Below, piece by piece: positions 4,618 through 54,790 of a stretch of 64,000 nucleotides of DNA (positions are counted from its first letter, which is position 1; each line of letters starts with the position of its first letter). The DNA comes from Ranitomeya imitator. Taxonomy: Eukaryota. The notes under the pieces are model-generated. The model worked only from the letters and a program-made list of their open reading frames with translations, was not told the DNA's origin and made no database searches. Position numbers and translations under genes: made by a program. The stretch is taken from NCBI RefSeq assembly GCF_032444005.1, contig NC_091287.1, positions 329,344,001 through 329,408,000 on the forward strand, written 5' to 3'.

Positions 4618-4656
4618 GCTCTGACGAAGGTCCGGTGTGGACCGAAAACGTTTAGC
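4618..4656 (+). ncRNA. Minimal type I hammerhead ribozyme motif
   Basis: GCU/AGC helix I; CUGACGA plus extra A; helix II GGUCC-GGUGU-GGACC; GAAA; single A-U pair capped by palindromic ACGU; U at the cleavage position (4653). AATAAA follows at 4680-4685. Confidence 0.65.
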
Positions 4657-4802
4657 AGTTTTGTTTGTATGGATGCATCAATAAATTAAGAAGCTTTTTC
4701 TCACATTGAGTGCCAAGTTTTATTCATCTGTATTCTACGGGGTGGACACCCTACTTGAGCACCTCCAACACCCATATCTATCGAGTGCCGTGTTCTCCAA
4801 TA

Positions 4803-8800: not shown

Positions 8801-9829
8801 GCTTATGACATCCAATGCCAGAGCATCAGATGCAATATGCTAATGACCCTCGGCTCCAGCTCTGCTGGGGGAGTGAGTCCAGAGTCATGCTACTGTGTTC
8901 CGATTCTCTCACATGAGGGAATCTCAGCACAGGTATGTAGGAGACGGAGAACACCATCTCCTCCATGGGGTATATCGGACTGTACCAGGATGATATCTAA
9001 GTGCAGTCCTATGTTTCACATGCACCCATAGACTTGTATGGGTGCAAGTGAGCCGAGTCTTGCTGCCAATTGGAGCATGCTACCAATTCCGCATGAGAAA
9101 ATAATCGCAGATCTCAGCTGCCTCATAGAATAATGTTTTATTGCATAGCACTCAGCCGTAATATACCCTATTATGACCCTGGCCTTAATCTGAGAGTAGC
9201 ATAATAGAGAACAAGAACCTGATTCCAGGCATGGGTCACTTATTAGCCTGTGTGTTGCAGTTTCAAAACAGTTTTTTCAGCAGAAGAATAACACTGCTGG
9301 ATTACAGCTCACAAGCAGAGCAAACTAATCTGTGTAACCCTATACCACCACTCACAATGGCTAGCTCACAATGCACAGTGTACACAGGTAGCTACCAGCC
9401 AGGGGTATGGGCGGAAGGTGTACAAAATAGAAAACTGCCATTTTAATGAAGGTGTGTAGTTTTTATATATTCACCGTAAATATAGTATATAGGACCAGCC
9501 CAAACATTACTACCGTATATCGGATGTGCCTATACATTACTATTTTACATATGATGTGTCCATACATTACTACCATATATCGGATGTGTCCATTTACAGC
9601 AGGTGAAATAAGTATTGAACATAAAATACAGCAAATTTATAAATGCAGGTGCACAAATTGTTGTTGGAAGATGGTACTTGTGTGTATGACGACTAGAATT
9701 GAGCAAAACATTTCTGATGTGATTGTCTATGTCTTGTCGGGACTTTCATACTCCCTTGGCAGCCAGGGCAGTTTACACTTCTGCGCCCAGCTTTCTTGAC
9801 ATAGCATCCTGGGTACCTCTAGGGATTAA

Positions 9830-10698
9830 AGGGAACCTGTCACCCCGTTTTTTCAAGAAGAGCTAAAAATAGCGTTAAATAGGGGCAGAGCTGGGCTTTA
9901 CATTAGTGTATTTTGGAGCCTTTATTCCCCACCTATGCTGCCGAAATACCTTTGTAAAGTCACCGTTTTGGGCTGTCACTCACGCTGGTCAGGTCATATG
10001 GGCGTGGTGACAGCGCTGTTTCTCCCCCAGATATCCGTTGGTGGCGTAGTGGTGTGCACATGTCCAAGTGGCGAATCCACTGCGCAGCTTCAAGGAAAAT
10101 AGCGCGATCTGCGCTATTCAGCCGTTTATCGGTGGGCGCGGCCATCTTTGTGAGGCCGCGCGTGCGCAGATGGTTCATCTCGGCTTCCCGGGGCTTCAGG
10201 AAAATGGCCGTGGAATGCTGCGCGTGCGCAGATGGAGATCGCGGCGGCCATTTTCCTACAGCCGAGATGTGAACTCGGCTTCAGGAAAATGGCCGTCGAG
10301 ATCGCCATCTGCGCACGCGCGGCAACCCGCGGCCATTTTCCTGAATCCCCGGGAAGCCGAGAAGAACCATCTGCGCACGCGCGGCCTCACAAAGATGGCC
10401 GCACCCACCGATAAACGGCTGAATAGCGCAGATCGCGCTATTTTCCTTGAAGCTGCGCAGTGGATTTGCCACTTGGACATGCGCACACCACTACGCCACC
10501 AACGGAGATCAGCGCTGTCACCATGCCCATATGACCTGACCAGCGTGAGTGACAGCCCAAAACGGCGACTTTACAAAGGTATTTCGGCAGCATAGGTGGG
10601 GAATAAAGGCTCCAAAATACACTAATGTAAAGCACAGCTCTGCCCCTATTTAACGCTATTTTTAGCTCTTCTTGAAAAAACGGGGTGACAGGTTCCCT
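9830..10698. mobile_element. T2/Kolobok-type palindromic MITE (869 bp)
   Basis: TTAA duplication (9826-9829, 10699-10702); termini AGGGAACCTGTCACC / GGTGACAGGTTCCCT. The whole element is an approximately 430-bp-arm inverted repeat centred near 10268. Confidence 0.9.
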
Positions 10699-11534
10699 TT
10701 AAAAAGCCATAAGTGCAAAAGGCAGTGCAAATCTCGTGGCTCAACTTTAATGATAGCTATTACGTGGCAAATGGAAAAGAACATTTTACAGTGCAGTGTG
10801 CATTTTGCATTTAGATATTGATTAGCAGATACACTCTAAAGATCAAAAATTTCCCAGTGTATGTGGTATTGTATCAATGGGGCTACATTCTCCCAATGGA
10901 AGCCATTGCAGCCCCTTTCAGACCAGCATGTTTACATAGATCATTTTTTTTCAACTGTATATGAAAGTTCAGCAGAGGGCAACTACCAAAAAATGTAAGA
11001 TCGCACTATTTTATCTTTTTATAATTTAACCCTATGGCCGACATAAGCCTTTGTATATGGGTACATATGTCAGAGACTTCTGTCAGTGGTGTCTATCTGG
11101 AAATCTTCCTGACATATACTGCCAGTGTAAAGCTTAGATGCAATGTGTACTGAACCTAACATTTTTAACATGTTATATGCATCCTAAAAAATGTTTAGAA
11201 ATCACTCTTTCTTCATAGGCCCCATCTGATCAGAACATGTCCAAGAGTTTAGTTTTGTAGAATTGTGCCCTGTTGTCTGTTCTCACATGTTTTCACAATG
11301 AGAATACAGGGCGAAACACAAGACAAAAGGCTGAGGCTACCAGGAGAATCTAATGGGACAGAGTCTTTGTTTTCTGCAAAAAAAAATAAGATCACTTGAT
11401 TTTGAAATTCTCCTGGTTTGGCAAGAAATTACCCCTATAAGCTCCTTTGTCATCAAGTTTGTGCAGAACACTGACTTGAAGGTGTTGTTAGAGGTAATAT
11501 CTGGGGTGACTGAGCTGAGTGATGTGCCATATAA

Positions 11535-11832: not shown

Positions 11833-13511
11833 AGTAGACACATATATGTATATATATTGCTATTTTTTCCAGCGCTATACAGCTTGAAAGCCGGTAATTC
11901 AATTACCGGCTTTTTCTTTCTCCTTCCTAAAACCCGACATGATTTGAGACATGGTTTACATACAGTAAACCATGTCTTCTCTCCATTTTTTTTGCAGATT
12001 CCACACTACTAATGTCAGTAGTGTGTATCTGCAAAATTTGGCCGTTCTAACTCTTAAAATAAAGGGTTAAATGGCGGAAAAAATTGGCGTGGGCTCCCGC
12101 ACAATTTTCTCCGCCAGAGTAGTAAAGCCAGTGACTGAGGGCAGATATTAATAGCCTGGAGAGGGTCCATGGTTATTGGCCCCCCCCTGGCTAAAAATAT
12201 CTGCCCCCAGCCACCCCAGAAAAGGCACATCTGGAAGATGCGCCTATTCTGGCACTTGGCCACTCTCTTCCCATTCCCGTGTAGCGGTGGGATATGGGGT
12301 AATGAAGGGTTAATGCCACCTTGCTATTGTAAGGTGACATTAAGCCAGATTAATAATGGAGAGGCGTCAATTATGACACCTATCCATTATTAATCCAATT
12401 GTAGTAAAGGGTTAAATAAAACACAAACACATTATTTAAAATTATTTTAATGAAATAAAAACAATGGTTGTTGGAGTATTTTATTCTACGCCCAATCCAG
12501 TCACTGAAGACCCTCGTTCTGTGAAAGAAAAAACATAATAAACCAACAATATACTTACCCTCCGCAGATCTGTAACGTCCAACGATGTAAATCCTTCTGA
12601 AGGGGTTAAAACATTTTGCAGCAAGGAGCTTTGCTAATGCAATGCTACTCCTCGCTGCAAAACCCCGGGGAATGAAGCTAAATATAGATCAATGAGCTAT
12701 ATTTAGCTTCATTTGCGGTGAGGCGCCCTCTGCTGGATGTTCATAGATCGTGCCGGGGGGGGGGGCAATAACCATGGACCCTCTCCAGGCTATTAATATC
12801 TGCCCTCAGTCACTGGCTTTACTACTCTGGCGGAGAAAATTGCGCGGGAGCCCACGCCAATTTTTTCCGCCATTTCACCCTTTATTTTAAGAGTTAGAAC
12901 GGCCAAATTTTGCAGATACACACTACTGACATTAGTAGTGTGGATTATGCAAAAAAAATGGAGAGAAGACATGGTTTACTGTATGTAAACCATGTCTCAA
13001 ATCATGTCGGGTTTTAGGAAGGAGAAAGAAAAAGCCGGTAATTGAATTACAGGCTTTCAAGCTGTATAGCGCTGGAATAAATATTAATATATATACATAT
13101 ATGTGTCTCACTGACATATATGTATATATATACCTATTCTATGTGTACACATTTATTCTACCTATTGGACTGTAAGCTGTCAGTGTGATTTTACTGTACA
13201 CCGCACTGAATTGCCGGCTTTTCTCTCTAACAGCGCTGCGTATTTCTCGCAAGTCACACTGCTTATCCGTGTGTAATCCGTATTTTTCACGCTTCCATAG
13301 ACTTTCATTGGCGTATTTCTTGCGCAGTACGGTGACAAACGCAGCATGCTGCGATTTTGTACGGCCGTAGAAAGCCGTATAATACTGATCAGTAAAATAC
13401 GGCAGATAGGAGCAGAGGCATAGAGAATAATTGTGCCGTATTTTTTGCGAGTTTTACGGACGTAGTTTCTGCGCTCTTACGTCCGTAAAACTAGCAAGTG
13501 TGAAGCCGGCC
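11535..13511. mobile_element. Non-autonomous PIF/Harbinger element (1977 bp)
   Basis: TIR GGCCGGCTTCACACT / AGTGTGAAGCCGGCC; TAA on both sides (11532-11534, 13512-13514). Subterminal sequence matches both ends of 15599-20259 in opposite orientation. Confidence 0.92.
11791..11829. repeat. (TA)n microsatellite
   Basis: Uninterrupted TA run. Confidence 0.95.
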
Positions 13512-23795: not shown

Positions 23796-26700
23796 CCCCT
23801 TTACCCTGAAGGGTGGTTTGCACGTTAATGACCGGGCCAATTTTTACAATTCTGACCACTGTCCCTTTATGAGGTTATAACTCTGGAACGCTTCAACGGA
23901 TCCCCGTGATTCTGACAATGTTTTCTCATGACATATTGTACTTCATGATAGTGGTAAAATTTCTTTGATATTACCTGCGTTTATTTGTGAAAAAAATGGA
24001 AATTTGGCAAAAATTTTGAAAATTTTGCAATTTTCCAAATTTGAATTTTTATGCAATTAAATCACAGAGATATGTCACACAAAATACTTAATAAGTAACA
24101 TTTCCCACATGTCTACTTTACTTCAGCACAATTTTGGAACCAAAATTTTTTTTTGTTAGGGAGTTATAAGGGTTAAAATTTGACCAGCAATTTCTCATTT
24201 TTACAATACCATTTTTTTAGGGACCACATCTCATTTGAAGTCATTTTGAGGGGTCTGTATGATAGAAAATACCCAAGTGTGACACCATTCTAAAAACTGC
24301 ACCCCTCAAGGTGCTCAAAACCATATTCAAGAAGTTTATTAACCCTTGTGGTGCTTCACAGGAATTTTTGGAATGTTTAAATAAAAATGAACATTTAACT
24401 TTTTTTCACAAAAAATTTACTTCAGCTCCAATTTGTTTTATTTTACCCAGGGTAACAGGAGAAAATGGATGCCAAAAGTTGTTGTACAATTTGTCCTGAG
24501 TACGCTGATACCCCATATGTGGGGGTAAACCACTGTTTGGGCAAATGGGAGAGCTCGGAAGGGAAGGAGCGCCGTTTGACTTTTCAATGCAAAATTAACA
24601 GGAATTGAGATGGGACACCATGTTGCGTTTGGAGAGCCACTGATGTGCCTAAATATTGAAACCCCCCCACAAGTGACACCATTTTGGAAAGTAGACCTCC
24701 TAAGGAACTTATCTAGATGTGTGGTGAGCGCTTTGACCCACCAAGGGCTTCACAGAAGTTTATAATGCAGAGCCGTAAAAATAAAACAAAAACTTTTTCC
24801 CACAAAAATTATATTTTAGCCCCCAGTTTTGTATTTTCCCGAGGGTAACAGGAGAAATTGGACCCCAAAAGTTATTGTCCAATTTGTCCTGAGTGCGCTG
24901 ATACCCCATATGTGGGGGGGAACCATTGTTTGGATGCATGGGAGGGCTCGGAAGGGAAAGCGCCATTTGGAATGCAGAGTTAGATGGAATGGTCTGCAGT
25001 CGTCACATTGCATTTGCAGAGCCCCTAATGTACCTAAACAGTAGAAACCCCCCACAAGTAACACCATTTTGGAAAGTAGACCCCCCAAGGAACTTATCTA
25101 GATGTGTTGTGAGAACTTTGAGCCCCCAAGTGTTTCACTACAGTTTATAACGCAGAACCGTGAAAATAAAAAATCTTTTTTATTTCCCACAAAAATTATT
25201 TTTTAGCCCCCAGTTTTGTATTTTCCCAAGGGTAACAGGAGAAATTGGACTCCAAAGTTTGTTGTCCAATTTGTCCTGAGTACGCTGATACCCCATATGT
25301 TGGGGTAAACCCCTATTTGGGCACACGGGAGAGCTCGAAAGGGAAGGAGCACTGTTTTACTTTTTCAACGCAGAATTGGCTGGAATTGAGGTTGGACGCC
25401 ATGTCGCGTTTGGAGAGCCCCTGATGTGCCTAAACAGTGGAAACCCCCCAAATTATAACTGAAACCCTAATCCAAACACACCCCTAACCCTAAGCCCAAC
25501 AGTAAACCTAACCACACCTCTAACCCTGACACACCCCTAACCCTAATCCCAACCCTATTCCCAACCGTAAATGTAATCTAAACCCTAACCGTAACTTTAG
25601 CCCCAACCCTAACCCTAACTTTAGCCCCAGCCCTAACTGTAGCCTTAACGTTAGCCCCAACCCTAGCCCTAGCCCTAACCCTAACCCTAGCCCTAACCCT
25701 AACCCTAACCCTAATGGGAAAATGGAAATAAATACTTTTTTTTAATTTTTTCCTAACTAAGGGGGTGATGAAGGGGGTTTGATTTACTTTTATAGCGGGT
25801 TTTTTAGCGGATTTTTATGATTGGCAGCCGTCACACACTAAAAGATGCTTTTTATTGCAAAAAATATTTTTTGCGTTACCACATTTTGAAAGCTATAATT
25901 TTTCCATATTTGAGTCCACAGAGTCATGTGAGGTCTTGTTTTTTCCGGGACGAGTTGACGGTTTTATTGGTAACAATTTTGGGCATGTGACATCTTTTGA
26001 TCGCTTTTTATTCCAATTTTTGTGAGGCAGAATGAACAAAAACCAGCTATTCATGAATTTCTTTGGGGGAGGCATTTATACCGTTCCACGTTTGGTAAAT
26101 TTGATAAAGCAGTTTTATTCTTCGGGTCAGTGCGATTACAGCGATACCTCATTTATATCATTTTTTTATGTTTTGGCTCTTTTATATGATAAAAACTATT
26201 TTATAGAAAAAATAATTATTTTTGCATCGCTTTATTCTCAGGACTAAAGATGACGTTTTCAGCGATACCATGGTAATTTATATCTGTCTTTTTGATCGCG
26301 TGTTATTCCACTTTTTGTTCGGCGGTATGATAATAAAGCGTTGTTTTTTGCCTCGTTTTTTTTTTTTCTTACGGTGTTTACTGAAGGGGTTAACTAGTGG
26401 GCCAGTTTTATAGGTCGGGTCCTTACGGACGCGGCAATACTAAATATGTGTACTTTTATTGTTTTTTTTATTTAGATAAAGAAATGTATTTATGGGAATA
26501 ATATATATATATATTTCATTATTTAGGATTTTTTTTTTTACACATTTGGAAAAAAATTTTTTTTTACTTTTTTACTTTGTCCCAGGGGGGACATCACAGA
26601 TCGCTGATCTGACAGTTTGCACAGCACTCTGTCAGATCAGCGATCTGATTTAGAGCACTGCAGGCTTACCAAGCGCCTGCTCTGAGCAGGCACTTGGTAA

Positions 26701-27640: not shown

Positions 27641-30308
27641 GTGCTAGTTGCAGTCTTTTTTATATATTTCATCTTCTCCCTTCTCTAATGTCATTATTGG
27701 ACTTTGTGGTGTCATGCTCTTGGATTCAAACCCTTGATTCTGTGGTCAGTGTCTCTTTTCCCTGAGCCATAACAGATACACACACAGATTTCCTTTGTGT
27801 TGTAGTTTTGTTACTGTGCAGATCTGAAGTTGTTGGTTGTAATAATCACCTAGGCAAGTTAACGATGCAACTATTTTTTATTCCTTACATCCATGGTTTT
27901 ACAAAAAATCCAGATAGATGGCCAAAATACAATGTCCTAAGTCCACAAGATCCCTTTTTTGTGGCCGATAGTCTCACTGCCCCATACCAGTCGGTACTCA
28001 CTGTATCCCAACTTTTGGTTAGCTCACAGATTTCGTATCTCCCGCCAGTATAGTCTGTAGTCAAAGTCAAGGCACAGCCAGAAGAAAAATAACACAACCG
28101 ACACCCATGTATCCAGGAGAAACAATCCTTAAGAAAGTTTGTGAAATCCAGATGACAGATCCCTCAAACATAGCAGGGATATCCAGCCCAGCTACCAATC
28201 TCCAAAACTCCATAGGCCATCCATCCAAGGCTCCAGGACCCAGCTTAGAATATCCTTTCCCTTCAACGTCACTCCAGCAACAACATTTCCTCATCAGTCC
28301 TCAGTACCCAAAGCCGCCTCCTGGAATTGAGCCCAGTCCATGGGAAACACTCCTCCTCCCAATGCATTGGTGGAGGTGTCTCACTCAGGCTGAGCTCCAT
28401 CATCTGGGATTGCATTTTAGACCCCCAGTAGTGATAGCTCCCCTGGGTCTACTATCCCCATCCACGCAATGGGACTAGTTGTGGGGAGCACAATGACTCG
28501 AGACCATGAGATTAATAAAATGATTGCTTATCTTTACCTTTAGCAATCCCCTGTGTGGCCTTAGGTATACATAAGATCAGCCTTCACGTCTTCCTCTGCT
28601 TTCTGTTGTGAGAGAGTGCCAGAGCTGTAGTTGTGGCTGAGCATATTAGATCTTGCGTGCTCTGGTCTCTTTTCACATGAAAAGACTGTTCTTTAATCAG
28701 TGTTCCTGTGTCTCTGTTCTCCATCTCTTGAGGTTCTCCTCCAGGTTGCTGGAGGTCTTCTCCATACGTTTGCACAAAAACATAGAAACAGTCCAGTTGT
28801 AACTTAAAATGCAAAACTTTACTTGTTTCTGTTCGCAGAACATCCTTATTTGATACAACAACAGCATAGGGTTCCATACAGTCCTCATTCTCCACTTTCC
28901 CTGCACCTCTTCAGTACATGCCTGGGTCCTACCATCACTACGCTCAGGGGATCCATTGTCTGTTTCACACTGGATCTGAGGGCATCAGCCCATGCATTTA
29001 AGCTGCCACATTATAGAGCCACCTGCATCCCCATACTGCTATGACTGCCGCTGTATCCTCTTCTTCACTACTGCTTGCACACTGCTGCTCAAGCTGTACT
29101 TATGGCCCCCATGGGCCCTGGATGGCTGAGCTTCTCGCTTATAATGTTACGGAGCTACTGGATAGCTCGGGCTCTAAGGCCCACCCAAGCTGTTCAGGCT
29201 CCCAAGACCCTCAGACTCCAACCAGGAAACTCTTGCTGCCTTACCCCAGCAAACTCCTCCTATAATCAACTATTTATTATATACCCATCTTGTGGCCCAA
29301 ATAAGGTACTACACTGTCCCTATACTATTATAGAGGAACACGATACATAGGGTATGAAACATTCCTATAACAACAAATGGTTAATAGACACCATATACGT
29401 AGGAAAACTAAATTATCTTTACACAGTGCAACCGGGATGTGCTTAAAGTGGTAGAGGCGTGTATCTGTCTTTGTGACCCCTTACACTGTCACTGAATGGA
29501 AACATAGATTCCTGAGGATGAACTGACAAGCAAGCAAATCTCTAATAAAACACAATAATGCCTACATAACTGGTGCTCCGTGCTGGAAAAATTCTGTAAC
29601 CCATAAACCATGGACTCCACTCTACGTCCATTCGTCCTATAGTCCTTAGTCCATGGCCAGCTCCTCACAGTTACCTTTACCTTTTGTTTTAGATAACAGG
29701 TGATTTTCATTTACTCTGTTTGTCTGCTGTATCACCTTTCAGTGCAGCTTTAAATACCTTCCCCTACTGTTGTTTCCTACTAGTGACAGACTTTGTTGGA
29801 TTCATTCACTTTGCTGTAGTTTATATTTTTTGCAGTTGTTTTGTTAGTGATCCCTTTATCTCTTAGGAGACTACTACTCTAGCAATCTAAGGAGCTGCTA
29901 CGGATATTCAGGGAAATCCGTCGTCGAGTAGGGGCGCCATTGCATTATCTTAGGGTGCCAACCTCCGAGGTCAGGTAGGGACAGACCAGGCTTAGAGAAG
30001 GGATTGTCATAGTCTGAACCGGGACCAGTCAGGTTCAGGTATTTAAAGGCACAGATGATTGGCCTCGGGGAGACCAAAACATCCAACACCGCGGAGACAC
30101 CATCACGTGTTTCTCAACGCAGTGATTCCAGAACACTGCCCCCATCCCTTATGGGAAATATGCAGATGCATGTAAAGAAGCTGCGGAGACACCATCACGT
30201 GTTTCTCGACGCAAGCAGTGAATAGCCAGGCCTTTCCCCGGGAAGGAACAACCACGGGAAGGGCAGCAGCCTATGAAGGAAAGCCACCTATGCCAAGCAT
30301 GGAATCCA

Positions 30309-30353
30309 TCCACAGACAGCTGTTTCGGGGTTTTTGCCCCTCATCAGTGTGGA
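30309..30353 (-). ncRNA. Type I hammerhead ribozyme motif (mirror copy)
   Basis: Exact reverse complement of 30388-30432. Confidence 0.88.
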
Positions 30354-30387
30354 GTAGGAATCTGGCTCCTAATAGCCAGATTCCTAC

Positions 30388-30432
30388 TCCACACTGATGA
30401 GGGGCAAAAACCCCGAAACAGCTGTCTGTGGA
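30388..30432 (+). ncRNA. Type I hammerhead ribozyme motif
   Basis: Helix I UCCACA/UGUGGA; CUGAUGA; helix II GGGG-CAAAAA-CCCC; GAAA; helix III C-AGCU-G (palindromic CAGCUG); GUC triplet with predicted cleavage after C30426. Confidence 0.88.
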
Positions 30433-30719
30433 TGGATACCATGCTTGGCATAGGTGGCATTCCTTCATAGGATGCTGCCCTTCCCGTGGTTGTTCCTTCC
30501 CGGGGAAAGGCCTGGCTATTCACTGCTTGGGTCGAGAAACACGTGATGGTGTCTCCGCAGCTTCTTTACATGCAGGTTCAGGTATTTGTCTCACTGGATT
30601 GTATGTTACCTGTGTGAATGTGCTATGGCAGTCATAACATGTGGCTGGTGCTCTACTCCTTGCCCTAGTTTTCGATTCGGGTGTGCAGGTATACTAGTTC
30701 ATGTGCACACGTGTGCCTA

Positions 30720-31530
30720 CAGTGGGGAACATAGGTATTTGATACACTACCAGTTTTGCAAGTTAGAGAGGTCAGTAATTTTTATTGTAGGCACACTACA
30801 ACTGCAAGAGACAGAAATTAAAAAAATGGAGAAAATCACATTGTACACATTGTACGATTTTTACATAATTAATTTGCACTTTATTGCATGAAATCAGTAT
30901 TTGATACTATAGAAAAACAAAACTTACTAGTTAGTACAGAAACCTTTGTTTCTAATTACAGAAGTCAGATGTTTCCTGTAGTTCTTGAACACGTTTGCAT
31001 ACAGAGAAGCAAGGATTTTGGCCCACACCTCCAAACAGATCTTCTCCAGATCTTTCAGGTTTTTGGGCCGTCACTTGGAAACATTGAGTTTCAGATTCCT
31101 TCTAAGATTTTCTATTGGGTTCAGGTCTGGAGACTGTCTGGGCCACTCCAGGACCTTGAAATGCTTCTTACAGAGCCACTCCTTAGTTGCCCTGGCTGTG
31201 TTTTTTTGGGTCATTGTCCTATCTTCAATGCTCTTACTGATGGAAGGAGGTTATTGGCCAAAATCTCGCAATACGTGACTCCATCCATCCTCCCTTCAAT
31301 ATGGTGCAGTCATCCGGTCCTCTCTGCAGAAAAGCACCCCAAAGTATGATGTTTCCCCCACCATGCTTCTTGGTTGGGATGGTGTTCTTGGGGTTTTACT
31401 CATCCTTCTACTTCCTTCAAACACAGCGAGTGGAGTTGATATTTTAGTCTTATCTGACCACATGACCTTCTCTCATGCCTCCACTGGATCATCCAGATGG
31501 TCATTGGTGAACATCAAATGGGTCTGGACA
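30720..31530 (-). mobile_element. Truncated Tc1 element (one TIR plus transposase 3' part)
   Basis: TA-CAGTGGGG terminus at 30720. Plus-strand text such as CCACTCCAGGACCTTG is the antisense of [14 protein letters not shown]. Ends at a (TATAGR)n microsatellite at ~31535-31570. Confidence 0.8.
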
Positions 31531-32213: not shown

Positions 32214-33952
32214 CTAGATGGTGGTCCGATTCTAACGCATCGGGTATTCTAGAATATGAATGTCCACGTAGTATATTGCCCAGCGACGTAGCATATTGCC
32301 CAGCCACGTAGTATATTGCCCAGTCAAGTAGCATATTGCCCAGTCATGTAGTATATTGCCCAGTCACGTAGTATATTGGCCAGTGACGTAGTATATTGCC
32401 CAGTCACATAGTATGTTGCCCAGCCACGTAGTATGTTGCCCAGTCACATAGTATATTGCCCAGGCACATAGTATATTGCCCAGCCACGTAGTATAAAGCA
32501 GAGCCACGTAGTACGGTATATTGCCCAGTCACGTAGTATATTGCCCAGTGATGTAGTATATTGCCCAGCCACGTAGTATATAGCAGAGCCACGTAGTACG
32601 GTATATTGCCCAGTCACGTAGTATATTGCCCAGCCACATAGTATATAGCAGAGCCACGGAGTATATTGCCCAGCCACATAGTTTATTGCCCAGCCACATA
32701 GTATATTGCCCAGCCACGTAGTACTGTATATTGCCCAGTGACGTAGTATATTGCCCAGCCATATAGTATATAGCAGAGCCACGTAGTATATTGCCCAGCC
32801 ACGTAGTATATTGCCCAGCACAGAGCCACGTAGTATAGAGACTTAAAAAAAAAATAAACATATACTCACCTTCCGAAGGCCCGTTGGAAGTCCTGCTATA
32901 CTCACCATCCGCCGCCTTGGCCGCTCCTCGCCACGCTCTCAGGACCGCTCCATTGCAATCAGCAGCTTCCGGTCCCAGGGCTGGTGTGAGCAGGACCTAT
33001 GATGATGTCGCGGTCACATGACCGTGACATCACGGCAGGTCCTTGTCGCACACCAGCCCTGGGACCGGAAGCTGCCGCTTGCAATAGAGTGGTCCCGGGA
33101 GCGTTGCGAGCAGCGGGAAAGGCAGCGGAGGGTGGGTATAGGAGGTTTTTTATATTTTTTTTTATTTTTAACATGACATATTTTTACTATTGATGCTGCA
33201 TAGGCAGCATCAATAGTAAATAGTTGGGGACACACCGGGTTAATAGAAGCGGTAACAGAGTGCCTTACACCGCGGTCCATTACCGCTGCCATTAACCCTG
33301 TGTGAGCGGTGAGTGGAGGGGATTACGGAGTGGGCGCCAGGCAGTGAGTGCAGGGGAGTAGGGGAGGGACTAATCGGACTGTGCCCGTCGCTGATTGGTC
33401 CCGGCAACCATGACAGGCAGCTGCCGAGACCAATCAGTGAATTAATAACTGTGACAGAAGGCCAGACAGACAGACAGAAGGATTGTGGCCCGATTCTAAC
33501 GCATCGGGTATTCTAGAATATGCATGTCCCCGTAGTTTATGGACAATGATGATTCCAGAATTCGTGGCAGACTGTGCCCGTCACTGATTGGTCGAGGCAA
33601 CCTTTATGACATCATCGTCGCCATGGCAACCATTATGACATCTACGTCGATACTGTGCCCGTCGCTGAATCAGAAACGTGGGATGTCTACGTCCTTTATG
33701 ACATCATCGTCGCTGTGCCCGTTGCTGATTGGTCGAGGCCTGGCGGCCTTGACCAATCAGACGTGGGATGTCTACGTCCTTTATGACATCTTCGTCGCTG
33801 AGCCCGTCGCTGATTGGTCGAGGCCTGGTGGCCTCGACCAATCAGAGACGCGGGATTTCCAGGACAGACAGACAGACAGAAAGACAGACAGACAGACAGA
33901 AAGACAGACAGACAGACAGACGGAAAAACCCTTAGACAATTATATATATAGA
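32214..33952 (-). mobile_element. Complete composite non-autonomous Helitron-like element
   Basis: Minus strand: A|TCTATATATATAATTG 5' end, (GTCT)n microsatellite, 20-bp minisatellite, ...CCATCTAG|T 3' end. Inserted between A and T with no TSD. Confidence 0.8.
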
Positions 33953-39316: not shown

Positions 39317-39500
39317 TACATGATGAGACAGTATTTGGAGTTGGGATGGATTTTTTTTTCCTCATGGGGTTCTTGTTTTCTTTTGGTTTAGCATGTTAGG
39401 TTATCGGTTGAATTCAATTTACTTATGTCTGCCTTCAACCTTAAAAACTTTGAAACTATGAATTTATTAAACTACTTGAACAGCGTTACCAATAGATATA

Positions 39501-41107
39501 CAGTGGGGCAAAAAAGTATTTAGTCAGTCAGCAATAGTGCAAGTTCCACCACTTAAAAAGATGAGAGGCGTCTGTAATTTACATCATAGGTAGGCCTCAA
39601 CTATGGGAGACAAACTGAGAAAAAAAAATCCAGAAAATCACATTGTCTGTTTTTTTTAACATTTTATTTGCATATTATGGTGGAAAATATGTATTTGGTC
39701 AGAAACAAACAATCAAGATTTCTGGCTCTCACAGACCTGTAACTTCTTCTTTAAGAGTCTCCTCTTTCCTCCACTCATTACCTGTAGTAATGGCACCTGT
39801 TTAAACTTGTTATCAGTATAAAAAGACACCTGTGCACACCCTCAAACAGTCTGACTCCAAACTCCACTATGGTGAAGACCAAAGAGCTGTCAAAGGACAC
39901 CAGAAACAAAATTGTAGCCCTGCACCAGGCTGGGAAGACTGAATCTGCAATAGCCAACCAGCTTGGAGTGAAGAAATCAACAGTGGGAGCAAGAATTAGA
40001 AAATGGAAGACATACAAGACCACTGATAATCTCCCTCGATCTGGGGCTACACGCAAAATCCCACCCCGTGGGGTCAGAATGATCACAAGAACGATGAGCA
40101 AAAATCCCAGAACCACGCGGGGGGACCTAGTGAATGAACTGCAGAGAGCTGGGATCAATGTAACAAGGCCTACCATAAGTAACACACTACGCCACCATGG
40201 ACTCAGATCCTGCAGTGCCAGATGTGTCCCACTGCTTAAGCCAGTACATGTCCGGGCCCGTCTGAAGTTTGCTAGAGAACATTTGGATGATCCAGAGGAG
40301 TTTTGGGAGAATGTCCTATGGTCTGATAAAACCAAACTGGAACTGTTTGGTAGAAACACAACTTGTCGTGTTTGGAGGAAAAAGAATACTGAGTTGCATC
40401 CATCAAACACCATACCTACTGTAAAGCATGGTGGTGGAAACATCATGCTTTGGGGCTGTTTCTCTGCAAAGGGGCCAGGACGACTGATCCGGGTACATGA
40501 AAGAATGAATGGGGCCATGTATCGTGAGATTTTGAGTACAAACCTCCTTCCATCAGCAAGGGCATTGAAGATGAAACGTGGCTGGGTCTTTCAACATGAC
40601 AATGATCCAAAGCACACCACCAGGGCAACGAAGGAGTGGCTTCGTAAGAAGCATTTCAAGGTCCTGGAGTGGCCTAGCCAGTCTCCAGATCTCAACCCTA
40701 TAGAAAACCTTTGGAGGGAGTTGAAAGTCCGTGTTGCCAAGCGAAAAGCCAAAAACATCACTGCTCTAGAGGAGATCTGCATGGAGGAATGGGCCAACAT
40801 ACCAACAACAGTGTGTGGCAACCTTGTGAAGACTTACAGAAAACGTTTGACCTCTGTCATTGCCAACAAAGGATATATTACAAAGTATTGAGATGAAATT
40901 TTGTTTCTGACCAAATACTTATTTTCCACCATAATATGCAAATAAAATGTTAAAAAAACAGACAATGTGATTTTCTGGATTTTTTTTTCTCAGTTTGTCT
41001 CCCATAGTTGAGGTCTACCTATGATGTAAATTACAGACGCCTCTCATCTTTTTAAGTGGTGGAACTTGCACTATTGCTGACTGACTAAATACTTTTTTGC
41101 CCCACTG
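39501..41107 (+). mobile_element. Full-length Tc1 transposon (1607 bp) with ~209-bp TIRs
   Basis: TA duplication (39499-39500, 41108-41109); TIRs 39501-39709 and 40900-41107 start CAGTGGGGCAAAAAAGTATTT and differ by about 2 substitutions and 1 indel. Confidence 0.97.
39869..40891 (+). CDS. Tc1-family DD34E transposase, 340 aa, uninterrupted
   Basis: Paired-like HTH N-terminus, WSD, QHD, and exactly 34 residues to the E of SPDLNPIE. Confidence 0.95.
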
Positions 41108-43341
41108 TATATTACTATCATTTTCTCTTTAGAGTCCTACCCTTATTAGCAATATGTATTTGGCCTCCAGATGACTATATGGTTAGATCTTAGCTCTGTT
41201 TACAGATGTTTAACAGGTATTCATATAGCAAGTACAGTGCTTAGTAGTGCTGGTAATTTCAACATATGCTCAGCATGAATGTTAGTGTATTAGTTTTTAA
41301 GATATATGTAACCTTAGATTTTGATATTTTTTTCTCTCAGATTATAGTGATGTATTAAGGCATTATATAACGAATATAAATGAGTTTTATTTTACTCTTT
41401 GCATACTACAATCATAGTTTTAAGTTACAAATAAGACCACCATATAAAGATGAGGTGCATTAATATTATTTAGTCACTCTATGCTATTATTATTATAACA
41501 GTATGATATAATGACTAAATAATGCTAACATACCTTGAATTAATCCACTGTATTACAATAAATATCAGACCTGTACAATTAATGATATGTTTACACAGTG
41601 ACATAGTAGTGATATAGCCCTACAGGTGGTCTGTAAGGTATGATCACACTGCAGACTCAATAAAAAAAACTGTATATAACATGTGAAGCCAAAAGAACAA
41701 TAAACAACAGTACATTCCATTGATACAAGACCTAGCATCTTCTGAGTTTGTAGTCATTTTAGAGGTGATTTATCCTGCTGATAATAGTAACATTATTATT
41801 TTTCTGATATTATATAATGTCAGCTATTAAATCTTTCATTTACTTTCCATAAACTAGCTACTTAAACTTGAGTAGAAATATTATCAATTTTCTTTTCCTA
41901 AAAACATTCATCGAAAATGTTGGCTGTGAAAAGAGAAAACGGGGCAGAAAGTAAGATTCCGTACAGTAATATTTCCAGAAAACATGGAAAACCCCATTGG
42001 TCTCCATTAATGCTAAGTAGAGATTATAGGATCTGGCAAAATTCAAATTCAGCAAATTGCACCTATTTTCCAGTGGACTTCAATTCACAGTGAAGTTATT
42101 CTTGGTACATTGATTGTTTCTTACTATAATTTGTAGTCTTGTGCATTCGGAAATCCTGTTTTTTTTTTGGGGGGGGGGTTTACAGTTCAGCAAAATGGAG
42201 ACCAGTTGGTCGCCATTTTGCTTCTTTTGTTGGGAACGAATTACAAAGCATCCATATTATGGAGATTGCGGATTTTTGCAAAATTCAAATAGTATTCAAT
42301 TCCACTCTAATAAATTCAACCATCTCTCTCTTTACAGGCCTCAAGTTCTGACTAGTATAAATAATAAAAACCATTAGGGTTTGTATAAACCTTAAAAAAT
42401 ATATTCATTTTATATAACAAAAATGTTTTATACATTAGCACTTTGTTCTAATAAAATGAACAACTATCAACAAAGTGGATGCATTATTGCATAAAAAAGT
42501 CATGAACTGCTAGGAAAAAGGAACAGAAAAGCATTACCAGTAAAGTAGTCACAGAAAGACTTCCAACTATACAGCAAAACTGGGTCGGGAACAAAAGATC
42601 CAATAAAACAGGAAAAAGGATGGGATGAATGAAAAAGAATTCTGAGCAGTCTGAATTGGTAACTAGGAAATCAAGAAAACCAAGAGTACATAGGATCAGA
42701 AACCAGGTCAATGAATGTCCAATCCAATGGCAACCTGCCAACAAACAAGATTGTTGTTTACCCCAGTTTTTCTCCAAGGAACTTTCTTTAACAAAAGGAT
42801 AATCAGGTGGCATGCTGGTAAAAGTTCAGGCAAAAATAGCAAAGAAAGAGCCAGCTGCAAACTGCCTATGGATTCAGCTGGTATATAGCATCTACTTAGC
42901 CAGGGGCTATGGCTCAAATTATTGTAATTATGATGTTATATGTTTTGTTCTAAATATGAAAAGTATCTTATAAAATAACATCTTACACAAGTACAGTCAT
43001 TGCTGTATTTTAACTGGTGCAGGCACAGTATGGGGTGTTTTGCACCTTCAGGACCAGACCACTAATTTTAGTATACTTTTAATGCCTATAATTTTTATTT
43101 GCTGGGATAATAATGAGTTTTTGCAGCTTTTTTGTGAGAAGTGCCGAAGTGTTTTTGAATTTATTTTAATTTGTTGGTGTTTTTATGGTTATTTTATAAT
43201 CTGTCCCTCGAAAAGAAAAATGGGAAAATCCTCTTATAGTTGCTATGGTCACTGTTGGTGCCAAGCTGACTCCAGTTGGACCAAAGTAGCAACTTGCAGC
43301 AGTAAAGATCACGATGATCACATGACCGGTCACATTAAGAC

Positions 43342-46122: not shown

Positions 46123-48322
46123 ATGGATTCGTCTTGCCCTGCAGCTGCAGAGCCCAGCGCTCCTCAAGCCCCAGTAAGTGCGGCAGAGATGGGTCCCTGT
46201 TGTGAATTCTGTGGCGGAGCTCCCTCCTGTGGTCACAAGTGGTACTTCGGCTGGTTCTCTCTGTGAGCTTCCGTTGGTGGAGGAAAGTGGTACTGCGGCT
46301 TCTGAGTTTCCTTCCTCAGGTGATGTGGTGAAGTCGTTAGGTGCTGCTCTATTTAACTCCACCTAGTGCTTTGATCCTGGCCTCCTGTCAATGTTCTAGT
46401 ATTGGACCTGTTTCCTCCTGGATCATTCCTGTGGCCTGCTGCTCTGCATAGCTAAGTTCCTCTTTGCTATTTGTTTGCTGTTTTTTTCTGTCCAGCTTGT
46501 CAATTTGTTTTTACTGCTTGCTGGTAGCTCTGGGATGCAGAGGGTGTACCTCCGTGCCGTTAGTTCGGTACGGAGGGTCTTTTTGCCCCCTTTGCGTGGT
46601 GTTTGTAGGGTTTTGTGTTGACCGCAAAGTTACCTTTCCTATCCTCGCTCTGTTCAGAAAGTTGGGCCTCACTTTGCTAAATCTATTTCATCTCTACGTT
46701 TGTCTTTTCATCTTAACTCACAGTCATTATATGTGGGGGCTGCCTTTTCCTTTGGGGTATTTCTCTGAGGCAAGGTAGGCTTATTTTCTATCTTCATGCT
46801 AGCTAGTTTCTCAGGCCGTGCCGAGTTGCATAGGGAGCGTTAGGCGCAATCCACGGCTGCCTTTAGTGTGTTGGAGAGGATTAGGGATTGCGGTCAACAG
46901 AGTTCCCACGTCTCAGAGCTCGTTCTTCTTTTTTGGGTTATTGCCAGGTCACTGTATGTGCGCTGATCTCTATGTCCATTGTGGTACTGAATTACCTTTC
47001 ATAACAGGTCCCGTTTTAAGGTAGTTTAAATATACCTTCTTACACCGCTTCCTCTCTCATTTCAGGGAGTCAAGCCTGGCCCTAGAACCGTTACTAAACG
47101 CAAATGCGCTACCTGTAATGTAAAAATGCCCTTAGATTGGGAGAAAAAGTTGTGCCAACCTTGTACGGATAAAGTAGTCCGGGCGGAACACCCTTCTTTA
47201 ATTGAAGAAATTCGCTCCCTGGTTAGGCAAGAGGTCCAAACCTCTTTAGCCACACTCGCCCCCCCTCCACCACCACCACCGTCCTCACCTGGTACATTAC
47301 TTCCCAAAAAGAGGAAAATCCAGGAATATTCTGGGTCAGAGTCTGAAGAGTCTTATACGTCATCTTCAGTCAAATGGGAAGATGTGTTACCCCATAAGTC
47401 TGCGGAAATTAGAAAATATCTTTTCTCCTCTGAATACATTGAGGAATTGGTGTCTGCAGTGAGGAATACTATGGGGCTAAAAGAGGAACCAGTTCCTCAG
47501 TCTATACAAGACGAACTATTCGGTATACATACCGAAAAACAACCTGGGTTTCCCGTACATAAAAGTATCATAGACATGATCAATAATGAGTGGGAACTGC
47601 CTGAGAAACGGCTAACTACCCCCTCAGACTTTAAACATCGGTTTCCTCTAGATGAGGATTCAATCAAATGGAGCATCCCCAAAATAGATGTTCAGGTGGC
47701 AAGAGTGGCTAAGAAGACGGCTCTGCCGTTCAAGGATTCTTCCCAGTTAAAGGACCCCTTAGATAGGAAGATTGAGAGCCTTCTCAAAAAATCCTGGGAA
47801 ACTTCTACCTCGGCCCTCAGATTCAACATTGCATCCACCTGTGTGGCCCGCTCTCTCTTCTGCTGGATAGAAGAGCTAGAAAACCACATCTCTCAGGGTA
47901 CCCCCAGAGAAGAAGTATTGGACTACTTGCCTATTTTGTATCGGGCAACTGGGTTCCTTGCAGACGCCTCACTAGAATCCATCCATGTGGCCGCCAGATC
48001 TCTAGTCCAGACAAATTCAGCCAGAAGAGCTCTCTGGCTAAAAATGTGGAGCGGAGATGTCACTTAAAAAATAAAGCTTTGTTCCATTCCTTTTAAGGGT
48101 GACTATGTGTTTGGGCCCTCATTAGATGACATACTGGAAAAAGCCACGGACAGAAAGAAAACTCTTCCTGAACAAAGACCTCCCAGGAAGCGTTTTTTTC
48201 GACCCTCCCAGCCCCAGCCCTACCAGGGTAAAGGAAAAGGGAAGTCTGGGAGGTGGAGTTATGCCAAGGGGAAACCTAAAAACACCCTTATTCCCCAACA
48301 AACACAACAAGAAAAACAATGA
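46123..48322 (+). pseudogene. DIRS ORF1 (gag-like), predicted spliced: 46123-46173 joined to 47066-48322
   Basis: A phase-0 join gives MDSSCPAAAEPSAPQAP/GVKPGPRTVTKRKCATC...CQPC, in frame with ORF 47126-48067. One in-frame TAA at 48065-48067, then the frame continues to 48322. Confidence 0.75.
46198..47006. mobile_element. Solo LTR (809 bp) inserted in the DIRS ORF1 intron
   Basis: Termini TGTTGTG / CATAACA; 6-bp duplication GGTCCC (46192-46197, 47007-47012). Confidence 0.88.
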
Positions 48323-50213
48323 CTCTGATCTGGTGGGGGGGAGGCTTTCGAACTTTGTTCACAGTTGGCAGAACATCTCCAACAGCCCTTGGGTGGTGAG
48401 TGTCATCCATCAGGGTCTTCTGATAGAGTTCGATGCGCCTCCTCCCAGGATCTTAAGAGTCACCTCCCCGCCATCTCGGGAGACTCAAAAACTGATGATG
48501 GCAGGAATACAGGACTTACTAGACTCGAGAGCTATTTCTGTGGTCCCGGTAAACGAGCAAGGGAAGGGACACTATTCCCGTATCTTCATGGTAAAAAAGC
48601 CTTCTGGGCAGGCTCGGATTATAATAAATCTAAAAGCTCTCAACAAATAGATAACTTACCGCAAATTCAAAATGGAGTCAGTAAAAACAGCCATCCCTCT
48701 GATAGCTCCTCATTCCTATATGGCAACAATAGACCTCAAGGATGCCTATTTCCATATTCCAATGCATCCTCGCCACAGGAAATACCTAAGATTTACGGTC
48801 CAATTCAATCAAAAGGTCCTACATTTCCAATACAATGTTCTCCCCTTCGGGATCTCCTCGGCCCCAAGGGTTTTCTCCAGAGTCATGGCGGAAGCTGTAG
48901 CTCACATCAGGAACCAAGACGTCGCTATAGTGCCGTACTTGGACAACCTTTTAATAATTGGTCCTTCCGCTGAAATTCTCAATCAGAGAATTTCCAAAAC
49001 TCTGAACATCTTGCAGCTTTTGGGTTGGATACCCAATCTAAAGAAGTCTCAACTATTACCTTCAAAGGTGATAAAATTCCTCGGAGTCCTTTTGGACTCG
49101 GAAAATCAAAAATCTTTTCTACCAGAGGAACACCAGAGGAACCTGATATCCAAGGTCCTAGACTTCAAGAAACAACGGTCTCCGACTCTGCGGACTGCAA
49201 TGTCTCTTCTGGGGTCGATGACGGCCTGTATACAATCAGTCCAGTGGGCTCAAAGCCACTCCAGAGTTCTGCAGGCACACATCCTAGGAAATTGGAACGG
49301 AAATCCAAATTTCCTGAACAGAAGAGTCTACACTCCAGGGAAGGTAAAGGCCTCGTTAACCTGGTGGGTGATCCAATCAAACCTGCTAAAAGGAGTGGAC
49401 TGGATACAAGATCCGCTGGTAACAGTGACAACAGATGCCAGTCAAAAAGGTTGGGGAGCAGTGGTTTCGCAAATCCCATTCCAGGGTCACTGGAATCGGG
49501 AAGAAAGCTCCAATTCCTCCAACTTCAGAGAATTGATGGCAGTGGAGAGGGCCCTTCTGGCAGCCAGCAGTATCATCATAGGTCAACATGTCAGAGTCTA
49601 CTCAGACAATATGATGACTGTAGCACATCTAAAACACCAGGGGAGTCTGAAGTTCAACCATTTGAGAGCAATATCAAACAGAATTTTTTGCTGGGCAGAG
49701 AAACATCTCCTCTCACTATCAGCAATACATCTCAAAGGGTCAGTAAACATTCATGCGGATCTCCTAAGTCGTCACGATTTACATCCAGGAGAATGGAGCC
49801 TGAAGACAGACGTTTTCAGAATGTTGACAGACAGATGGGGACTCCCCGACATAGATCTTCTAGCGTCAAGCCAGAATGCACAGGTCAAGAACTACTTCTC
49901 TCTAGACCCCAAAGACAGGTCTCAAGGAATAGATGCCTTTGCTCATACATGGAGGTTCCATCTAGCGTACGTGTTTCCTCCAATACCTTTGCTTGCAAAA
50001 ACCCTCAGGAAGATCCGAGACGATCAGGTCCCGACTATCCTAGTAGCTCCGGCATGGCCAAAGAGGAGCTGGTATCACCTCATCAGAGAACTGAAGGTGG
50101 ATGGTCCAGTTTTTCTTCAAAAATCAGAAGATCTACTCTGCCAGGGCCCCTTTCATCATCTGGAGCCGCAGAAATTCAAGCTGGCAGCCTGGCTATTGAA
50201 GCCCAGGAACTAA
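48126..50213 (+). pseudogene. DIRS ORF2: reverse transcriptase, RNase H and methyltransferase-like domain
   Basis: IDLKDAYFHIP, LPFGISSAPRVF, YLDN (catalytic YxDD changed), TTDASQKGWG, NFRELMAV, VYSDN, and C-terminal IDLLAS...DAF...YVFPP...LVAPAWPKRSWY. In-frame TAG at 48648-48650. Confidence 0.92.
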
Positions 50214-54769: not shown

Positions 54770-54790
54770 TACCGTGGCACAGGCGACAGC

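What the first reader, a model, noticed from the sequence alone, without database searches (positions are those of the whole stretch)
30167..30574. Twin hammerhead ribozymes in a 408-bp palindrome: a ribozyme locked by its own antisense
Seen in sequence: two 201-bp arms (about 98% identical, 6-nt loop), each with an intact hammerhead pointing away from the centre (30388-30432 plus strand, 30309-30353 minus strand). Inference: read-through on either strand makes the antisense arm first, so the RNA should fold into a 200-bp duplex that blocks cleavage and could feed Dicer or ADAR against the whole family. Initiation near the loop would instead give two self-cleaving RNAs. Inverted terminal-repeat arrangements are known for Penelope-like elements, and tandem direct hammerhead repeats for retrozymes. 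I do not know a described case of this head-to-head ribozyme/anti-ribozyme unit.
Basis: partly seen in the sequence, partly recalled or inferred. Interest (0 to 1): 0.85.

Follow-up and report, generated by a model that had tools for sequence, protein, structure and literature searches.

The report
Head-to-head hammerhead retrozyme insertion
The 408-bp palindrome with two hammerhead ribozymes is real in the assembly, but it is one ordinary insertion of a very abundant ~353-nt ribozyme-carrying repeat, laid down head-to-head in the way Penelope-like retroelements are already known to insert.

Summary
Two 201-nt arms (4 mismatches, 6-nt spacer) each carry an identical, complete type I hammerhead pointing outward.

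It is not a stand-alone unit. A perfect 15-bp target-site duplication (30030-30044 and 30573-30587) brackets a single 528-bp insertion, 30045-30572. That insertion has a 323-nt inverted copy and a 208-nt direct copy of one non-coding repeat, joined 5' end to 5' end at a native 12-nt quasi-palindrome.

Public DNA contigs show the repeat at 10^5-10^6 summed depth, against about 15-45 in the flanks. The depth steps up at the left insertion boundary (30044/30045) and drops back within one 47-nt bin of the right one. The canonical form is a tandem 353-nt monomer. Other head-to-head junctions of the same family exist elsewhere.

TSD, an inverted 5' copy, a palindromic junction and unequal 3' ends make up the published Penelope-like-element (PLE) insertion signature. 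Hammerheads in PLE repeats, animal retrozymes as PLE passengers, and siRNAs from Penelope inverted repeats are all published too.

The "locked ribozyme" fold is thermodynamically trivial (-423 kcal/mol). This hammerhead type needs a tandem partner to cut, and I found no locus-specific transcription.

The scan's first-stage notes list many similar hammerhead palindromes with TSDs on other pieces of this genome (unchecked). Real feature, new member of a known kind, low interest.

The parts
30030..30044 (.). Left copy of the 15-bp target-site duplication, CAGGTTCAGGTATTT
   Evidence: Exact 15-mer repeated at 30573-30587. About 3e-5 such matches are expected by chance among the offsets searched. 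Family contigs diverge immediately left of 30045 (loose ends at 30044).
30045..30367 (-). Inverted, nearly full-length copy of the repeat (monomer positions m332 down to m10; sense on the minus strand). It includes the left palindrome arm plus 122 further bases, 30045-30166.
   Evidence: Contiguous family sequence: summed contig depth 10^5-10^6 throughout, and contigs span 30166/30167. Blastn of this segment finds only itself and the right arm in the window.
30310..30352 (-). Type I hammerhead of the inverted copy
   Evidence: Exact match to the 43-nt motif. Rfam HH9 27.3 bits, below the gathering score.
30365..30376 (.). Junction: native 12-nt quasi-palindrome GCTCCTAATAGC (8 of 12 positions self-complementary). 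The two copies overlap by 3 nt (GCT/AGC).
   Evidence: Canonical family contigs read straight through GCTCCTAAT-AGCCAG and differ from this locus only left of 30365 (25 contigs, 0.99 agreement). Self-complementarity computed.
30365..30572 (+). Direct copy of the repeat, monomer positions m1-m208. It ends 124 nt short of the inverted copy's 3' end.
30389..30431 (+). Type I hammerhead of the direct copy, with predicted cleavage after C30426 (m62)
   Evidence: Rfam HH9 24.3 bits, below the gathering score.
30573..30587 (.). Right copy of the 15-bp target-site duplication
   Evidence: The canonical repeat continues differently after m208 (as in the left copy), so these bases are target DNA, not element.
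30091..30121 (.). Second copy of a 31-nt internal motif of the repeat; the other copies are at 30183-30213 and, inverted, at 30528-30558
   Evidence: Families D1 and I2. It shows that the extra 122 bases belong to the same repeat.

Best explanation
This is one retrotransposition event of a non-coding, hammerhead-bearing repeat: an animal 'non-LTR retrozyme', that is, a passenger of Penelope-like elements. The canonical form of the repeat is a tandem 353-nt monomer present in very many copies.

The insertion made a 15-bp target-site duplication. It consists of two copies of the repeat joined 5' end to 5' end. One is nearly full length and inverted (m332 to m10). The other is direct (m1 to m208).

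Most likely mechanism (inferred): the PLE enzyme cut both target strands 15 bp apart, and each 3' end primed reverse transcription on a repeat RNA, starting at two different internal 3' sites. Both cDNAs ran to about the same RNA 5' end. Their 3' ends then paired through the repeat's own quasi-palindrome (GCT-N6-AGC) and were filled in.

The palindrome, and with it the outward-facing pair of hammerheads, is therefore a by-product of how the element inserts, not a device. The locus is probably inert. If transcribed by read-through it would form a ~200-bp hairpin in which the ribozyme cannot fold.

Shown: palindrome, ribozyme motifs, TSD, family abundance and boundaries, tandem canonical form, and other head-to-head junctions. 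Inferred: PLE machinery, priming on both strands, and run-off at a common RNA 5' end.
For: - Structure: a perfect 15-bp TSD at the ends of the composite.
- Boundaries: summed family contig depth is 10^5-10^6 against about 15-45 in unique flank. It steps up at 30044/30045 (loose ends there) and is back at flank level from the bin starting at 30587, within one 47-nt bin of the right insertion boundary.
- Canonical form: family contigs join m332 through 21 nt to m1, giving a 353-nt tandem monomer. This appears as the 'opposite strands' joint 30044 to 30365 in DNA and RNA runs.
- Unequal copies: the inverted copy runs 124 nt further 3' than the direct one, as continuous family sequence.
- Junction: a 3-nt overlap inside a native quasi-palindrome.
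- Recurrence: other contigs of the same organism join antisense m157, m170 or m89 directly to sense m7, m7 or m4. Unique flanks abut m2, m14 and m15. So the 5' ends seen here cluster at m1-m15, while the inverted partner is variably truncated.
- Literature on structure: inverted 5'-truncated copies, tails and TSDs are typical of PLEs (PMC8557442). Head-to-head is the most frequent arrangement, with palindromes at the junction (PMC3846280).
- Literature on mechanism: a PLE enzyme cleaves and extends both strands and initiates internally on the RNA (PMC11167929).
- Literature on the family: hammerheads lie in PLE repeats and act as dimers (PMC4209133). Vertebrate retrozymes are related to PLE pLTRs (bioRxiv 10.64898/2026.07.22.740005). 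Amphibian retrozymes of ~330-350 nt are reported (PMC7229834).
Against: - No PLE reverse transcriptase/GIY-YIG ORF lies at the locus, and none turned up among the eight of the window's nineteen ORFs of 150 aa or more that I scanned against Pfam. Mobilisation by a PLE rests on architecture and literature only.
- The difference between the two 3' ends is 124 nt, not the 30-40-bp 'tail' described for PLEs.
- Rfam does not call the ribozyme at its gathering score.
- The exact centre has no independent read support in the data I could reach.
- Priming on both strands versus self-priming cannot be settled from one locus.
Confidence: 0.8

Rival explanations
1. Same kind of insertion, but made by self-priming (snap-back). 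A single cDNA reached m1, folded back on the GCT-N6-AGC mini-hairpin and copied itself, giving the palindrome.
For: The axis sits exactly on a native mini-hairpin. Arkhipova et al. interpret the recurrent junction palindromes of PLEs as self-priming (PMC3846280). The near-identical 5' end points of the two arms follow automatically.
Against: The strand that is continuous through the loop is primed at the right end (m208). Its snap-back copy could not contain m209-m332, yet the left copy has these 124 nt as normal family sequence. The arms differ at 4 sites, all transversions, and at 30459 the family reads like the left arm. That fits two template RNAs better than decay of identical arms. Other junctions in the genome are asymmetric (m157|m7 and similar).
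Confidence: 0.12
2. One reading: a functional ribozyme/anti-ribozyme unit. Its hairpin transcript blocks cleavage and feeds Dicer or ADAR against the whole family, and the arrangement is kept for that reason.
For: The hairpin is overwhelmingly stable in silico. Family RNA is present in RNA-library contigs. Penelope inverted repeats yield siRNAs in Drosophila (PMC3681739).
Against: It is one of very many copies with the marks of a fresh neutral insertion (perfect TSD). There is no promoter inside. Unique flanks have RNA contig depth of 0-8. Nothing indicates conservation or selection. In Drosophila those siRNAs did not silence Penelope efficiently. The hammerhead needs a tandem partner anyway.
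Confidence: 0.05
3. Assembly or sequencing fold-back artefact: the palindrome does not exist in the animal's DNA.
For: PLE tandem/inverted structures are known to trouble assemblies (PMC8557442). I found no contig that clearly bridges the centre. The one candidate, in run X7, is an Illumina-adapter artefact. No run was listed for the 60-nt centre.
Against: A fold-back chimera would duplicate whatever lies next to the axis, flanks included. Here the composite is bracketed by a perfect TSD, the arms are of unequal length with proper family sequence, they differ at 4 positions, and the axis lies at the family's usual 5' end. Summed depth at 30361-30364 is not zero (359 and 1002 in X1 and X2), though that depth is not specific to this junction.
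Confidence: 0.04
4. A palindromic master copy is itself transcribed and retrotransposed, so this locus is a daughter of a head-to-head unit; or a tandem insert was later inverted at the DNA level.
For: Summed depth of 359-1002 in the junction-specific bin is above the single-copy level of about 15-45, so more than one locus might share this junction.
Against: That depth includes truncated copies and other variants. A 200-bp hairpin RNA is a poor template. The other junctions found have different break points, as expected if each is made anew. A later DNA inversion would not be expected to end exactly at a native quasi-palindrome with a TSD around the whole unit.
Confidence: 0.04

Closest known systems
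Penelope-like element insertions with an inverted 5'-truncated copy (head-to-head pLTRs), e.g. Pen2a_Av of Adineta vaga and Penelope of Drosophila virilis
   Same: A TSD brackets the whole composite. An inverted copy abuts the direct copy 5' to 5'. There is a short overlap or palindrome at the junction, unequal 3' ends, and a hammerhead in the repeated part (PMC3846280, PMC8557442, PMC4209133).
   Different: There is no RT/GIY-YIG ORF between or beside the repeats; the insert is only ~1.5 units of a non-coding repeat. The 3'-end difference is 124 nt rather than a 30-40-bp tail. The TSD is 15 bp, against 8-10 bp in the rotifer examples.
Animal non-LTR retrozymes / amphibian satellite-2-type hammerhead repeats (e.g. 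the axolotl 331- and 353-nt retrozymes; Xenopus retrozyme families)
   Same: A non-coding monomer of ~353 nt with one type I hammerhead (helix I 6 bp, helix II 4 bp, helix III 2 bp with a palindromic tetraloop). The family is in tandem and in huge copy number, its RNA is present in RNA libraries, and its TSD is longer than 4 bp (PMC7229834; bioRxiv 10.64898/2026.07.22.740005).
   Different: This locus is inverted, not tandem, so it cannot yield a unit-length RNA by double cleavage or a circle. The retrozyme papers I read do not mention inverted arrangements: 0 occurrences of 'inverted' in PMC7229834, and only a reference title in the preprint.
L1 twin priming (5' inversion of LINE-1 inserts)
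   Same: Both 3' ends of a staggered break prime cDNA synthesis. The result is an inverted 5' part and a direct 3' part within one TSD, joined by microhomology. This comparison rests on my own knowledge of Ostertag and Kazazian 2001, which I did not read here.
   Different: In L1 the two parts are different stretches of one RNA, so no palindrome results. Here both parts cover the same 200 nt, which needs two template molecules or a multimeric one.
Penelope inverted-repeat copies as siRNA sources in Drosophila
   Same: An inverted duplication of a hammerhead-bearing PLE repeat could give dsRNA on read-through (PMC3681739).
   Different: Small RNAs were not examined here, and the host is a vertebrate.

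Membership tests
Hammerhead ribozyme, type I (canonical metazoan form) | Conserved core CUGAUGA ... GAAA with the G10.1-C11.1 pair and an NUH cleavage triplet | tested here: met
   Exact in both arms: CUGAUGA, GGGG/CCCC, GAAAC, GUC.
Hammerhead ribozyme, type I (canonical metazoan form) | Three helices around the core, open at helix I: helix I ~6 bp, helix II ~4 bp, short helix III with a palindromic loop | tested here: met
   6 bp, 4 bp, and 2 bp plus AGCU. This matches the description in PMC4209133.
Hammerhead ribozyme, type I (canonical metazoan form) | Score at or above Rfam's gathering threshold for a hammerhead model | tested here: not met
   No hit at gathering score. Best is Hammerhead_HH9 at 27.3 and 24.3 bits against 52.
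Hammerhead ribozyme, type I (canonical metazoan form) | Self-cleavage | not testable with these tools
   Related amphibian motifs cut weakly as monomers and well as dimers (PMC7229834). Eight of nine Xenopus dimer constructs did not cut in vitro.
Animal non-LTR retrozyme | Non-coding monomer of ~150-450 nt carrying one type I hammerhead | tested here: met
   A 353-nt monomer reconstructed from contigs. The arm carries stop codons just downstream of the ribozyme (read directly from the sequence).
Animal non-LTR retrozyme | Tandem (head-to-tail) arrangement | tested here: not met
   This locus is head-to-head. The family elsewhere is tandem (m332-21 nt-m1 contigs).
Animal non-LTR retrozyme | Linear and circular unit-length RNAs | not testable with these tools
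   Family sequence is present in RNA-library contigs, but circles and DNA carry-over cannot be judged from them.
Penelope-like element insertion architecture | Target-site duplication around the whole composite | tested here: met
   15 of 15 bp.
Penelope-like element insertion architecture | Inverted 5'-truncated copy adjoining the 5' end (head-to-head), with an overlap or palindrome at the junction | tested here: met
   m10|m1 junction with a 3-nt overlap in a 12-nt quasi-palindrome. Other such junctions occur in the family.
Penelope-like element insertion architecture | 30-40-bp 'tail' at one end only | tested here: inconclusive
   The two 3' ends differ by 124 nt (m208 against m332). Unequal ends are present, but not of the published length.
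Penelope-like element insertion architecture | ORF with PLE-type reverse transcriptase and GIY-YIG endonuclease | tested here: not met
   There is no ORF in the 528-bp insert. No PLE RT turned up among the eight of the window's nineteen ORFs of 150 aa or more that were scanned against Pfam. It can therefore only be a non-autonomous passenger.

The most novel reading that the evidence does not exclude
Because the PLE insertion mechanism keeps making head-to-head copies, a 10^4-10^5-copy vertebrate retrozyme family would constantly seed its own long-hairpin loci. Read-through of these loci could supply Dicer- or ADAR-substrate RNA that damps the family's linear and circular RNAs. That would be a built-in brake, of which this near-perfect 201-bp hairpin would be one source.
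Probability: 0.08. Interest if true: 0.55.

Novelty: new member of a known kind. Interest (0 to 1): 0.22.

Why it matters
As a 'locked ribozyme' it matters little, because the arrangement is a known side product of PLE integration. Its modest value lies elsewhere. A purely non-coding retrozyme insert shows most of the PLE insertion signature: TSD, an inverted 5' copy, a junction palindrome and unequal 3' start sites. That is structural evidence, independent of sequence phylogeny, for the recent proposal that animal retrozymes are mobilised by PLEs. The clustered 5' ends (m1-m15), together with the variably truncated inverted partners, also give a testable picture of cDNA synthesis primed from both strands. 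For annotation, such palindromes should be read as single insertions and should not be called miRNA-like hairpins. The Rfam miRNA models give E-values down to 1e-12 here, all below their gathering scores.

Tried and rejected
- Rfam at gathering score gave nothing in the window. At relaxed threshold the top hits are miRNA-precursor models (MIR1883, MIR9486, mir-609 and others). All are far below their gathering scores and match only because any long hairpin fits them; I rejected them.
- My first fixed-length hammerhead pattern was mis-sized and found nothing. The gapped pattern fixed this.
- Blastn of the repeat against the window found no further copy, so I could not build a family alignment or test covariation.
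- Eight of the nineteen ORFs of 150 aa or more, scanned against Pfam, showed a Tc1/mariner transposase and an LTR-type RT but no PLE RT.
- Read support for the centre: contigs laid on 30325-30415 leave only 10-1002 summed depth at 30361-30364. The one X7 contig that seemed to bridge the centre is Illumina adapter (GCTCTTCCGATCT) fused to m1, and I rejected it.
- A run search with the 60-nt centre had only 2 sampled words, and none was listed.
- An empty-site allele was not identified. Joints 29824->30573 and 29982->30594 are unexplained.
- A full-text search for the ribozyme's exact sequence, and a search of the Xenopus retrozyme preprint's supplements, found nothing, so I could not name the family.
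- A TATA-like TTTATAG lies 22 nt upstream of m1 in canonical tandem copies. This is my own reading of the 30-nt consensus and is only a lead for the transcription start.
- The species was not identified beyond chordate; the scan's notes call it a frog.
Full report
**1. What is in the sequence**

The palindrome is exactly as described. The arms are 30167-30367 and 30374-30574, 201 nt each and 98% complementary, with 6 nt between them. The four differences lie 64, 85, 98 and 156 nt from the centre. All four are transversions.

Each arm holds the same 43-nt hammerhead string, at 30389-30431 (+) and 30310-30352 (-). It occurs nowhere else in the 64 kb, and 0 matches are expected by chance.

By hand this is a complete type I hammerhead:
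- helix I: 6 bp
- core: CUGAUGA
- helix II: 4 bp, closed by CAAAAA
- GAAA
- helix III: 2 bp, closed by the palindromic loop AGCU
- cleavage triplet: GUC

Rfam does not call it at its curated threshold. The best hammerhead scores are HH9 at 27.3 and 24.3 bits against a cut-off of 52. The higher-scoring miRNA models in that relaxed scan only reflect the long hairpin.

**2. It is one insertion, and larger than the palindrome**

A perfect 15-bp direct repeat, CAGGTTCAGGTATTT, lies at 30030-30044 and 30573-30587. It brackets 528 bp, 30045-30572.

Public DNA contigs from what appears to be the same species give an independent boundary. Summed depth is 10^5-10^6 inside the insert, against about 15-45 in the unique flank bins. 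Contigs break off at 30044/30045, and depth falls back from the bin starting at 30587, within one 47-nt bin of the right boundary.

So the 122 bases left of the palindrome (30045-30166) belong to the same repeat. A second copy of a 31-nt internal motif confirms this.

**3. The canonical family**

Family contigs that reach the centre from the right do not turn back. They read on as ...TGTGCCTTTATAGCCTTTTTACTAGGCACT before 30365 (25 contigs, agreement 0.99). Contigs leaving the left end at 30045 read the reverse complement of the same string.

The normal form is therefore a head-to-tail repeat of 353 nt. I number it m1 = 30365. On this scale:
- the ribozyme cuts after m62
- the direct (right) copy is m1-m208
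- the inverted (left) copy is m10-m332
- 21 nt (m333-m353) are absent

The two copies overlap by 3 nt (GCT/AGC) inside a native 12-nt quasi-palindrome, GCTCCTAATAGC.

**4. Recurrence**

The window holds no other copy. The contigs do show other head-to-head junctions of this family: antisense m157 joined to sense m7, antisense m170 to sense m7, and antisense m89 to sense m4. Unique flanks abut m2, m14 and m15.

The 5' ends seen here thus cluster at m1-m15, while the inverted partner is truncated at variable points. The present locus is simply the case where the partner is nearly full length, so the result looks like a clean palindrome.

The scan's first-stage notes list many hammerhead palindromes with TSDs of 14-17 bp and a 'size series' of inverted duplications on other pieces of this genome. 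I could not see those sequences and treat them as leads only.

**5. Comparison with what is known**

| Published finding | Source |
|---|---|
| PLE insertions are often preceded by an inverted 5'-truncated copy, carry a tail at one end, and have hammerheads in their pseudo-LTRs | PMC8557442 |
| The 'typical Penelope structure' is a TSD-flanked insert completed by an inverted pLTR overlapping the direct one; head-to-head is the most frequent arrangement, with palindromes at the junction | PMC3846280 |
| A purified PLE protein cleaves and extends both target strands and starts reverse transcription at internal RNA sites | PMC11167929 |
| Metazoan type I hammerheads have a 6-bp helix I, a 4-bp helix II and a 1-2-bp helix III with a palindromic loop; they are poor cutters alone and active as tandem dimers | PMC4209133, PMC7229834 |
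| Vertebrate retrozymes are argued to be non-autonomous PLE derivatives | bioRxiv 10.64898/2026.07.22.740005 |
| Penelope copies with long inverted repeats give siRNAs that map exactly to those repeats | PMC3681739 |

The hammerhead description matches this motif exactly. My cofold also prefers a dimer with an 8-bp intermolecular helix III (-43.9 kcal/mol against 2 x -19.2).

**6. Mechanism**

Shown:
- a single TSD-flanked insert with two copies joined 5' to 5'
- different 3' start points (m208 and m332)
- a junction in a native quasi-palindrome

Inferred: both 3' ends of a break staggered by 15 bp primed cDNA synthesis on repeat RNA. Both cDNAs ran to about the same RNA 5' end, and their ends annealed through the quasi-palindrome.

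I prefer this to single-cDNA snap-back for three reasons:
- The strand that is continuous through the loop starts at m208, so it cannot have templated m209-m332 of the other arm.
- The arms differ by four transversions. At 30459 the family reads like the left arm.
- Other junctions in the family are asymmetric.

A TATA-like TTTATAG lies 22 nt upstream of m1 in tandem copies, which would place a transcription start near m4-m10. This is speculative.

**7. Function**

A read-through RNA would fold into the long hairpin (-422.7 and -420.9 kcal/mol for the two strands, against -67 for one arm). The ribozyme would then not form.

Neither strand offers the tandem partner this ribozyme type needs, and neither arm has the upstream part of the monomer in front of it.

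RNA-library contigs contain the family. The unique flank bins have a depth of 0-8, so there is no sign that this locus is transcribed. The simplest reading is an inert, fairly young insertion.

**8. Limits**

- I could not confirm the centre with independent reads. The contigs are k=31 assemblies. The specific bin has low, non-specific depth, one apparent bridge was an adapter artefact, and the 60-nt run search listed nothing.
- The internal evidence argues strongly against an assembly fold-back: the TSD, the unequal arms of proper family sequence, the four differences, and an axis at the family's usual 5' end.
- The PLE partner was not found in this window.
- The species is known only as a chordate.

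Noticed in passing
window 1440-1475 (+) and 4621-4660 (+): Two further hammerhead-like cores of the minimal PLE type. They have CUGACGA, GAAA and a palindromic helix III with no loop (ACGCGCGU at the first; ACGU at the second). The first has a 6-bp helix I and a TATA-like box about 40 nt upstream. They belong to families different from the 353-nt repeat.
   Followed up: partly
window 9826-10702: An 877-bp near-perfect palindrome: arms 9826-10018/10510-10702 at 98% and 10030-10266/10274-10510 at 94%, with a 7-nt centre. It has no hammerhead core and no flanking direct repeat of 8 bp or more. Its kind is unknown.
   Followed up: partly
window 39496-41112: A Tc1/mariner (Sleeping Beauty-like) transposon with 161-nt terminal inverted repeats at 99% and an uninterrupted 340-aa transposase ORF at 39869-40891 (HTH_SB, HTH_Tnp_Tc3_2, DDE_3). 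It looks young. A 72%-similar fragment lies at 30846-31206, just right of the finding.
   Followed up: partly
window 29824->30573 and 29982->30594: DNA contigs at single-copy-like depth join these points, skipping 748 and 611 bp. The first joint lands exactly on the start of the right TSD copy. The second is also seen in an RNA run. They could reflect another allele or paralogue lacking the insert, or they could be repeat-driven.
   Followed up: no
window 25479-25726: A degenerate interstitial telomere-like array (CCCTAA variants) next to ~390-bp tandem repeats at 24403-25450.
   Followed up: no
window 5464-6500 and 32264-32848: Two arrays of the same 20-nt minisatellite (GGGCAATATACTACGTGNCT-like) in opposite orientation, 26 kb apart, 84-89% alike.
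   Followed up: no
window 11836-12187 / 12757-13108: 352-nt inverted repeats (97%) around a 569-bp spacer. Possibly a DNA transposon or another inverted retroelement structure; not examined.
   Followed up: no
window 47126-50908 and 54294-59386: LTR-retrotransposon material. There are ORFs with LAP2alpha-like, RVT_1 and RT_RNaseH domains at 47-51 kb, and two 300-nt direct repeats that are 100% identical at 54294 and 59087, around a 1482-aa ORF. The second is the element a first-stage note calls Gmr1-like.
   Followed up: no
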